From Octopus bimaculoides (Eukaryota), in assembly GCF_001194135.2 (NCBI RefSeq), contig NC_068983.1, positions 63,957,287-63,994,862 of the forward strand: DNA of 37,576 nucleotides, given 5' to 3'. The position numbers and the translations under genes are program-made. Position 1 is the first letter of the stretch; every line of letters starts with the position of its first letter. Positions 15,264-15,465 of the stretch are shown one piece after another. Below the pieces are notes generated by a model, which worked only from the letters and a program-made list of their open reading frames with translations, was not told the DNA's origin and did no database searches.

Positions 15264-15296
15264 ATAGTCATCGACGGTTTGAGTAGTCTTTTCTGA

Positions 15297-15332
<36 letters not shown>

Positions 15333-15365
15333 TCAGAAAAGACTACTCAAACCGTCGATGACTAT
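15264..15365. repeat. Perfect 102-bp palindrome 1: 35-bp arms around (AT)16
   Basis: 15264-15298 ATAGTCATCGACGGTTTGAGTAGTCTTTTCTGATG is the exact reverse complement of 15331-15365. Confidence 0.99.
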
Positions 15366-15465
15366 CGTGAGTGCAACTCACTAGCCGCTAGGCTATGCGT
15401 TCTTATATATATATATATATATATAAGAACGCATAGCCTAGCGGCTAGTGAGTTGCACTCACGAT
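15364..15465. repeat. Perfect 102-bp palindrome 2: 40-bp arms around (TA)11
   Basis: 15364-15403 ATCGTGAGTGCAACTCACTAGCCGCTAGGCTATGCGTTCT is the exact reverse complement of 15426-15465. Overlaps palindrome 1 by the dinucleotide AT. Confidence 0.99.

What the first reader, a model, noticed from the sequence alone, without database searches (positions are those of the whole stretch)
15264..15465. Two abutting perfect 102-bp (AT)n-centred palindromes: double fold-back repair scar or assembly artefact
Seen: the structure is W-X-(AT)16-X'-Y'-(TA)11-Y-Z. X/X' (35 bp) and Y'/Y (40 bp) are mismatch-free inverted pairs, and X' and Y' overlap by a 2-bp AT microhomology (15364-15365). Y is the head of a SINE that continues into Z, so Y' appears to be the derived copy, and the ancestral locus would be W-X-(AT)n-Y-Z. 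Inference: a break inside the self-complementary (AT)n (for example cruciform cleavage) could let each end fold back or be hairpin-capped, be extended or opened 35 and 40 nt away, and then be joined at the microhomology. Both ends of one break would then carry long palindromic additions. Counter-evidence: both palindromes are exactly 2 x 51 bp and offset by exactly 100 bp, and several other (TA)n tracts in this window sit beside assembly gaps. A fixed k-mer or read-length strand-flip artefact is therefore a serious alternative.
Basis: partly seen in the sequence, partly recalled or inferred. Interest (0 to 1): 0.7.

Follow-up and report, generated by a model that had tools for sequence, protein, structure and literature searches.

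The report
Twin AT-centred palindromes, probably misassembled duplication
Two perfect back-to-back 102-bp palindromes in a short-read octopus assembly are exactly what results if the middle 100 bp of an ordinary 100-bp tandem duplication is written backwards between two (AT)n runs, so they are more likely an assembly orientation error than a DNA-repair scar.

Summary
Positions 15264-15365 and 15364-15465 are two mismatch-free 102-bp palindromes centred on (AT)16 and (TA)11, sharing 2 bp. They are the only non-trivial palindromes in about 78 kb examined.

The window is very probably Octopus bimaculoides, from a gapped short-read assembly in which three of six gaps abut (TA)n. Y-Z is a diverged tRNA-derived SINE.

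New finding: reversing the central 100 bp (or any symmetric 78-122 bp segment) turns the region into a perfect 100-bp tandem duplication of X-(AT)13.5-Y. Its junction lies at an imperfect 7-nt microhomology (p about 0.009). The two layouts share 672 of 700 51-mers and have identical fork k-mers. The equal 51-nt arms are simply (100+2)/2. A symmetric flip forces them; random biological breakpoints give them only about 6% of the time. Perfect small tandem duplications are common in this window.

Best reading (about 0.5): a real slippage duplication whose junction unitig was mis-oriented. Rival (about 0.3): a real double snap-back end-joining scar. Only reads can decide. Amplicon size cannot separate the two, because both add 100 bp.

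The parts
13963..15190 (+). Context: degenerate mariner copy that lacks its 3' end and 3' TIR. It does not supply X or W.
   Evidence: 93% identical to positions 1-1210 of an intact 1294-bp mariner (Logan contig L001). Pfam Transposase_1 hit. Frameshifts and stops in the translation. The 3' TIR of L001 has no counterpart after about 15190.
15194..15263 (+). W: single-copy left flank, ending ...GCTAGC just before the left breakpoint.
   Evidence: No other copy in the window or in the octopus loci. No significant similarity to Y-Z.
15264..15298 (+). X: 35-nt left arm. It starts with AT-A-GTCA, the left copy of the breakpoint microhomology.
15299..15330 (.). (AT)16, centre of palindrome 1.
15331..15365 (-). 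X': perfect reverse complement of X.
15364..15403 (-). Y': perfect reverse complement of the first 40 nt of the SINE. It overlaps X' by AT.
15404..15425 (.). (TA)11, centre of palindrome 2.
15426..15465 (+). Y: head of a tRNA-derived SINE (A-box region up to ...CTCACGAT). This is the ancestral copy.
   Evidence: nhmmer and MAFFT alignment to copies at L007 17816-17956, L007 545-689 (-) and window about 773-829.
15466..15545 (+). Z: continuation of the same SINE (B-box region and body). It starts with C-GTCA, the right copy of the breakpoint microhomology.
   Evidence: Family homology is continuous across 15465|15466.
15315..15414 (.). Central 100 bp (rc(K1) joined to rc(K2)). Reversing this segment gives a perfect 100-bp tandem duplication. 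It equals the fork-bounded junction unitig of a k=51 de Bruijn graph.

Best explanation
The genome most likely carries an ordinary tandem duplication of a 100-bp unit, X(35)-(AT)13.5-Y(40). It would be made in one step by replication slippage or microhomology-mediated joining between AT-A-GTCA (the W|X boundary) and AT-C-GTCA (the Y|Z boundary, inside the SINE). (AT)n is its own reverse complement. In a short-read de Bruijn assembly, the short unitig that carries the Y|X junction therefore begins and ends in sequence that looks the same in both orientations. If that unitig is written in the wrong orientation, the result is W-X-(AT)16-X'-Y'-(TA)11-Y-Z, with both arms forced to (100+2)/2 = 51 nt and AT tracts of 32 and 22 nt instead of 27 and 27. 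Shown: the exact equivalence of the two layouts, the microhomology, the polarity, and the short-read, gap-at-(TA)n nature of the assembly. Inferred: that the duplication is the true layout, and the step of the pipeline at which the flip happened.
For: (1) Reversing 15315-15414 gives 102/102 identity at period 100, followed by one mismatch and 4 more matches. Both AT tracts become 27 nt. (2) Any symmetric segment of 78-122 bp, which is the fork-bounded junction unitig for k = 40-62, gives exactly the assembled sequence when reversed. (3) The assembled and tandem layouts share 672 of 700 canonical 51-mers (692 of 700 31-mers) and have identical fork k-mers and U-U runs. Only reads that cross a whole AT tract with both flanks can tell them apart. 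(4) A symmetric flip forces equal arms. Random crossover points in the two tracts give them in 23 of 392 cases, about 6%. (5) The junction sits at a 2-nt perfect, 6-of-7 imperfect homology, p about 0.009 for random breakpoints. This is typical of slippage duplications. (6) Perfect young tandem duplications are common here: 603-662 (31 bp x 1.9, 100%), 12477-12557 (36 bp x 2.2, 100%), and an older 123 bp x 1.8. (7) The assembly is a gapped short-read one. Three of six gaps abut (TA)n, and exact 55- and 58-nt duplicates end at gap edges in loci of the same genome. (8) De Bruijn assemblers are documented to join an edge to its own reverse complement and emit chimeric palindromes (rnaSPAdes preprint). 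(9) A one-step duplication is far commoner than the three template switches or two long snap-backs that the palindromic layout needs (my own knowledge of indel spectra).
Against: I could not identify the software step that flips the unitig. I recall, but could not verify here, that the O. bimaculoides contigs came from Meraculous. Its paper says gaps are closed only by splinting reads or unique k-mer walks, and are otherwise left as N (PMC3158087). Paired reads should orient even a 98-bp contig. The assembled sequence contains 28 51-mers that a tandem duplication would not supply. An assembler that requires read support should not invent them. None of the 23 other (TA)n tracts examined shows anything similar, so this is not a routine artefact. 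No reads, second assembly or orthologous locus could be reached.
Confidence: 0.5

Rival explanations
1. The double palindrome is real: a germline scar of one double-strand break inside an ancestral (AT)13-14 tract, repaired by synthesis-dependent microhomology-mediated (Pol theta-type) end joining. Each resected 3' tail ends in self-complementary AT. It snaps back on itself and is extended, copying X into X' on one end and Y (plus a few nt of Z) on the other. The two nascent ends then anneal through TGACTAT/TGACGAT (6 of 7) and are filled in and ligated.
For: Both inserted pieces are exact reverse complements of the immediately adjacent flank, and (AT)n is an ideal snap-back primer repeat. The 7-nt imperfect homology lies exactly at the 3' ends that would have to anneal, and the retained base is the nascent one. 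The snap-back model with new inverted repeats and junctional microhomology is published (PMC5728401; PMC4912351 and PMC2943611). The sum of the tracts (32+22 = 54 = 2 x 27) fits a break in a 27-nt tract. A read-supported assembler would output this sequence if it were true. The perfect arms fit a recent event.
Against: Equal 51-nt arms are unexplained, at about a 6% coincidence. Snap-back synthesis is described as limited and non-processive, whereas here it would be 35 and about 45 nt on both ends at once. Perfect 102-bp spacerless palindromes are expected to be unstable and poorly represented in Illumina libraries (my own knowledge), yet there is no gap here. No second example was seen in 78 kb.
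Confidence: 0.3
2. The locus is the simple W-X-(AT)n-Y-Z, and both the inverted copies and the X'|Y' junction were produced by gap filling, patching or chimeric reads at a long, unsequenceable (AT)n.
For: Other (TA)n tracts in this window are unresolved gaps. The arms equal a popular k of 51, and the middle piece is 2k-2 = 100 nt.
Against: A simple locus supplies no k-mers across the Y|X junction. The 6-of-7 homology at the junction involves bases of Z that lie outside the two 51-mers, so it would be pure coincidence, about 5% given a 2-nt overlap. In-vitro fold-back of a fragment ending in (AT)n would continue X' into W', not into Y'. (TA)n tracts of up to 64 nt are assembled normally elsewhere. 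Exact repeats of 55 and 58 nt at gap edges give no support to k = 51.
Confidence: 0.1
3. A real two-step history: a tandem duplication as above, followed by a biological inversion of the Y-X segment through recombination or template switching between the two 27-nt AT tracts, which are inverted as well as direct repeats of each other.
For: The tract lengths are conserved in sum (54 nt). AT tracts can pair in the inverted sense.
Against: The best pairing register would give tracts of 26/28 nt (arms 48/54 or 49/53), not 32/22. The observed split has about a 6% chance with random exchange points. The history needs two events with no mutation in between.
Confidence: 0.05

Closest known systems
De Bruijn-graph hairpin or orientation misassembly (an edge joined to its own reverse complement, giving a chimeric palindrome)
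   Same: Sequence is followed at once by its exact reverse complement. The breakpoints coincide with fork k-mers. The assembly is short-read with gaps at the same kind of repeat.
   Different: Here an internal unitig lying between two self-complementary microsatellites appears reversed, rather than a contig end folding back. The responsible software step was not identified. The presumed assembler is designed to avoid joins without read support.
Microhomology-mediated tandem duplication (replication slippage or MMEJ)
   Same: After reversing the middle 100 bp there are two perfect head-to-tail 100-bp copies, joined at AT within a 6-of-7 match. The ancestral single copy can be inferred from the SINE family.
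   Different: The sequence as deposited is not head-to-tail. The direct arrangement is an inference.
Snap-back SD-MMEJ / Pol theta-mediated end joining with templated insertions
   Same: The inserted DNA is the reverse complement of the adjacent flank. Priming is from an inverted (self-complementary) repeat at the break, and the final joint is at a microhomology.
   Different: Both ends would carry long (35-45 nt) snap-back tracts, whereas the published events involve limited synthesis.
Palindromic AT-rich repeats (human PATRRs) and (AT)n fragile sites
   Same: Near-perfect palindromes with an AT-rich centre that can extrude cruciforms (my own knowledge; fold).
   Different: PATRRs are several hundred bp long, single rather than paired, and have been verified experimentally. 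These are 102 bp, paired and unverified.
Short template-switch mutations (four-point model)
   Same: They create perfect inverted copies of nearby sequence in one replication event (my own knowledge).
   Different: A single switch-and-return copies one contiguous stretch. Here it would give Y'-(AT)n-X', not the observed X'-Y' order, so at least three switches are needed.

Membership tests
De Bruijn hairpin/orientation misassembly | Comes from a short-read graph assembly that fails at this repeat class | tested here: met
   There are six N gaps of estimated size, and three abut (TA)n. The window shares interspersed repeats and gap style with O. bimaculoides GCA_001194135.2 loci.
De Bruijn hairpin/orientation misassembly | Breakpoints coincide with graph fork nodes, and the alternative orientation uses the same nodes | tested here: met
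   The fork k-mers and U-U runs are identical for both layouts, and 672 of 700 51-mers are shared. Reversing the unitig for any k from 40 to 62 reproduces the assembled sequence.
De Bruijn hairpin/orientation misassembly | No reads support the palindrome-specific k-mers | not testable with these tools
   No read data or second assembly could be reached.
Microhomology-mediated tandem duplication | Two head-to-tail copies | tested here: inconclusive
   Not met as deposited. Met perfectly (102/102) once 15315-15414 is reversed.
Microhomology-mediated tandem duplication | Short homology at the two parental breakpoints | tested here: met
   The breakpoints read AT-A-GTCA and AT-C-GTCA, with p about 0.009.
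Snap-back SD-MMEJ / TMEJ scar | The insert is the reverse complement of break-adjacent sequence, primed from an inverted repeat | tested here: met
   X' and Y' are exact reverse complements of X and Y, each next to a self-complementary AT tract.
Snap-back SD-MMEJ / TMEJ scar | Limited, non-processive synthesis (short inserts) | tested here: inconclusive
   The inserts are 35 and 40-45 nt on both ends. The source paper describes limited synthesis. I did not extract a size distribution.
Snap-back SD-MMEJ / TMEJ scar | Dependence on Pol theta / alt-EJ factors | not testable with these tools
   This requires genetics.
Foldback transposon / MITE | Multiple copies with terminal inverted repeats and target-site duplications | tested here: not met
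   There is no other copy of X, W or either palindrome in the window or the octopus loci. Y' is a copy of an internal SINE segment. X is not the mariner TIR.
miRNA / hairpin RNA gene | A match to a curated family at its gathering score | tested here: not met
   All Rfam hits are generic AT-rich hairpin models below their gathering scores, on both strands.
tRNA-derived SINE (for Y-Z only) | Multiple dispersed copies with Pol III A and B boxes in a tRNA-like head | tested here: met
   Four related copies were found. The better-preserved L007 copy has TGGCTCAGTGG (A box) and AGTTCGAATCC (B box).
tRNA-derived SINE (for Y-Z only) | The head is recognised by a tRNA model | tested here: not met
   ARAGORN finds none. 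There is no Rfam tRNA hit on the window copy or on the L007 copy.

The most novel reading that the evidence does not exclude
The deposited sequence is correct. It would then record a single germline double-strand break inside an (AT)n microsatellite at which both ends underwent long snap-back synthesis before microhomology joining. This would create two abutting perfect cruciform-prone palindromes in one event, and would be a natural route by which AT-centred palindromes (PATRR-like fragile sites) are born.
Probability: 0.3. Interest if true: 0.6.

Novelty: not a real feature. Interest (0 to 1): 0.3.

Why it matters
If the palindromes are an artefact, the lesson is practical. Self-complementary microsatellites such as (AT)n remove orientation information from any short unitig lying between two of them. 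A tandem duplication can then be deposited as a pair of perfect palindromes that mimic a repair scar, a hairpin RNA gene (Rfam miRNA models score it at E about 1e-16) or a fragile site. A simple screen follows from this: does reversing the segment between two (AT)n runs produce a perfect direct repeat? That screen would flag such cases in other short-read assemblies. If the palindromes are real, the locus would be a rare nucleotide-resolution record of double snap-back end joining in an animal germline, and of the birth of AT-centred palindromes.

Tried and rejected
- **X as the mariner 3' TIR.** Rejected. The window copy aligns to an intact element only up to about 15181-15190 and lacks the TIR.
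- **W-X as a second, diverged SINE fragment.** Rejected. The alignment score is below the shuffle mean.
- **Foldback element or MITE.** Rejected. There are no other copies.
- **miRNA or structured RNA.** Rejected. Only sub-threshold generic hairpin hits were found.
- **An artefact at every (TA)n tract.** Rejected. 23 other tracts of up to 64 nt are clean.
- **A plain 'k = 51' concatenation.** Not needed, because any k from 40 to 62 gives the same result. The k could not be inferred either, since exact 55- and 58-nt repeats sit at gap edges in L007 and L008.
- **A single template-switch event.** Rejected. It would give the order Y'-(AT)n-X'.
- **Limulus as the source organism.** Rejected. It gave the best named mariner hits, but there are no shared repeats and the GC content is lower. 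Octopus loci share several repeat families.
- **Finding the same locus elsewhere.** This failed. Exact-protein look-ups of three window ORFs found nothing. A protein search with the ORF across Y'/Y found no candidates. A 23-mer of X is absent from the metagenome and prokaryote genome collections.
- **Finding the assembler's k in the literature.** This failed. Albertin 2015 is not held and other cephalopod papers do not give it. The SRA accessions of the Logan contigs are not mentioned in any held paper.

Full report
**Observation.** The structure is exactly as described.
- X (15264-15298) and X' (15331-15365) are 35-nt perfect inverted copies around (AT)16 (15299-15330).
- Y' (15364-15403) and Y (15426-15465) are 40-nt perfect inverted copies around (TA)11 (15404-15425).
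- Each palindrome is 2 x 51 nt, and they share AT at 15364-15365.
- The repeat finder extends the second palindrome to 56-nt arms with one mismatch (15359-15470). This means the end of X' (TGACTAT) resembles the reverse complement of the start of Z.
- As single-stranded DNA the region forms two perfect hairpins (-111 kcal/mol, z = -28 against shuffles).
- In the window plus 41 kb of related DNA, every other perfect palindrome with arms of 9 nt or more is a bare (AT)n run or a short AT-rich stretch with arms of at most 12 nt. None of the other 23 (TA)n tracts of 12-64 nt has inverted flanks.

**Context.** The window is eukaryotic and rich in microsatellites. It has six N gaps of variable size, and three of them directly abut (TA)n.
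- Upstream lies a degenerate mariner (13963 to about 15190). It is 93% identical to positions 1-1210 of an intact 1294-bp element and lacks the 3' TIR, so neither W nor X is mariner sequence.
- The best named mariner relatives were from Limulus, but a Limulus locus shares no other repeats with the window.
- Two Octopus bimaculoides loci (GCA_001194135.2) share several interspersed repeat families at 80-87% identity, a similar GC content and the same gap style, including 10-N gaps.
- I therefore take the window to be O. bimaculoides or a very close relative. I recall, without being able to verify it here, that those contigs are an Illumina/Meraculous assembly.

**Polarity.** Y-Z is a diverged member of a dispersed SINE family. 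The copies found are L007 17816-17956, L007 545-689 on the minus strand, window about 773-829, and a weak hit at window 22826-22955.
- The better-preserved copies show Pol III A and B boxes, although tRNA models do not recognise them.
- Family homology starts at the first bases of Y and runs unbroken across the Y|Z boundary (CACGAT|CGTCAG against family CACGATCGTGAG).
- Other copies are also preceded by dinucleotide repeats, so a (TA)n next to the SINE head is normal here.

**Key anatomy.** Define K1 = 15264-15314 and K2 = 15415-15465. The region is then K1, rc(K1), rc(K2), K2, with the two middle pieces overlapping by AT.
- The central 100 bp is the reverse complement of the string (TA)5.5-Y-X-(AT)8, which is a Y|X junction.
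- Reversing those 100 bp converts the region into a perfect tandem duplication. There is 102/102 identity at period 100, then one mismatch and four more matches, and both AT tracts become 27 nt.
- The parental breakpoints read gc-AT-A-GTCA (W|X) and cg-AT-C-GTCA (Y|Z). A 2-nt perfect, 6-of-7 imperfect match like this occurs at p about 0.009 for random breakpoint pairs in this window.
- Reversing any symmetric segment of 78-122 bp gives the same result. The fork-bounded junction unitig of a de Bruijn graph with any k from 40 to 62 therefore yields exactly the deposited sequence when flipped.
- An idealised U-U graph built from either layout has the same fork k-mers (starting at 15264, 15315, 15364 and 15415 for k = 51) and the same runs. 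The layouts share 672 of 700 51-mers, and each has only 28 private ones. All the private k-mers span a complete AT tract with both flanks.

**What the number 51 means.** The arms sum to 35 + 40 + 27 = 102. They are equal, at 51 each, only if the new tracts are 32 and 22 nt.
- A flip that is symmetric about the duplication junction forces this.
- Independent exchange points in the two tracts give it in 23 of 392 phase-compatible cases, about 6%. The best inverted pairing register would give 26/28.
It is the signature of a symmetric in-place reversal.
- I could not determine k. Exact 55- and 58-nt duplicates that end at gap edges in L007 and L008 show that it cannot be read off the assembly. The genome paper is not held.

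**Weighing the explanations.**
- *For a flipped tandem duplication:* it needs one common mutational step. The window itself contains two perfect young tandem duplications and one older one. It explains the equal arms, and the assembly visibly struggles at (TA)n. Joins of an edge to its own reverse complement that yield palindromic contigs are a documented graph artefact.
- *Against it:* the Meraculous paper states that gaps are closed only by splinting reads or unique k-mer walks, and are otherwise left as N. Paired reads should orient even a 98-bp contig. The deposited sequence also contains 28 51-mers that a tandem duplication cannot supply. I could not name the step at which a flip would occur, so that step is inferred.
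- *For a real structure:* the published snap-back SD-MMEJ/Pol theta model fits well. Resected 3' tails ending in self-complementary AT fold back and copy the adjacent flank, and the nascent ends anneal at a microhomology. The 6-of-7 homology lies exactly where those ends would pair.
- *Against a real structure:* there is the 6% coincidence of equal arms. It needs unusually long synthesis on both ends. Perfect spacerless palindromes are also expected to be poorly recovered in Illumina data (my own knowledge).
- *A pure gap-fill artefact on a simple locus is least likely.* Such a locus supplies no junction k-mers, and the extra junction homology involves bases outside the two 51-mers.
- *My estimates:* flipped tandem duplication about 0.5, real double snap-back scar about 0.3, other artefact about 0.1, duplication followed by a biological inversion about 0.05.

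**Comparison with known things.**
- As an artefact, it is a variant of de Bruijn hairpin or orientation errors, made possible by two self-complementary microsatellites.
- The underlying mutation would be an ordinary microhomology-mediated tandem duplication.
- As biology, it works like snap-back SD-MMEJ and resembles the birth of a PATRR-type palindrome, but membership cannot be established without reads and genetics.
- It is not a foldback transposon (no other copies), not a miRNA gene (only sub-threshold generic hairpin matches), and not a single template-switch mutation (wrong order of the inverted pieces).

**What led nowhere.**
- Exact-protein look-ups of window ORFs.
- A protein search with the ORF across Y'/Y.
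- Scans of the metagenome and prokaryote collections for a 23-mer of X.
- Literature searches for the Logan run accessions and for the assembler's k.

**Decisive tests.** These are read counts of three diagnostic strings, long reads, or a TaqI or BfaI digest of the amplicon. Amplicon size alone cannot separate the palindromic layout from the tandem layout.

Noticed in passing
window 13963-15190: A degenerate mariner copy. It is 93% identical to an intact 1294-bp element assembled from SRA run SRR20902413 (342-aa transposase). It has frameshifts and stops and has lost about 85-105 bp of its 3' end, including the TIR. The 5' TIR begins TCAGGTCATCCCATAAGTTCTG at about 13966.
   Followed up: partly
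window 19689-20000, 22422-22599, 37093-37102: Three of the six N gaps sit inside or directly beside (TA)n tracts. The others sit at poly-C (7487), at a TCC repeat (26922) and in unique sequence (18627). (TA)n is a recurrent failure point of this assembly.
   Followed up: yes
window 603-662, 12477-12557 and 33464-33689: Two perfect small tandem duplications (31 bp x 1.9 and 36 bp x 2.2, both 100% identical) and an older 123 bp x 1.8 one (80%). Short tandem duplications are frequent in this genome.
   Followed up: partly
L007 2052-2109 = 2605-2662; L008 15984-16038 = 16110-16164: Exact 58-nt and 55-nt direct repeats that each end precisely at an N-gap edge in O. bimaculoides GCA_001194135.2. They look like redundant contig ends flanking gaps (unrecognised overlaps or allelic length variants).
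   Followed up: no
window 15404-15545; L007 17790-17956; L007 545-720; window 740-830: Copies of the tRNA-derived SINE family are each preceded at the 5' end by a dinucleotide microsatellite (TA, CA or TG). This suggests either an insertion preference for such repeats or microsatellite birth at the SINE head.
   Followed up: no
window 31746-31968 and 32606-32974: Members of abundant octopus interspersed repeat families. The first matches at least 7 places in 41 kb of O. bimaculoides DNA at 74-85% identity. The second matches L007 4383-4737 at 87%.
   Followed up: no
window 24226-24729 (-): A 167-aa ORF with a reverse-transcriptase domain (Pfam RVT_1, E = 9e-9), presumably a LINE fragment.
   Followed up: partly
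window 15262-15470: Rfam miRNA precursor models (mir-3688, MIR6217 and others) score both palindromes on both strands at E about 1e-16 but below their gathering scores. Any perfect AT-centred hairpin triggers them, which is a trap for automated ncRNA annotation.
   Followed up: yes
window 5161-6006 (+): A 281-aa ORF, the longest in the window, with a Cys-rich C-terminal part (CPFCPSVYIGQTG). It has no Pfam match at E <= 0.01 and may be a decayed mobile-element protein.
   Followed up: partly
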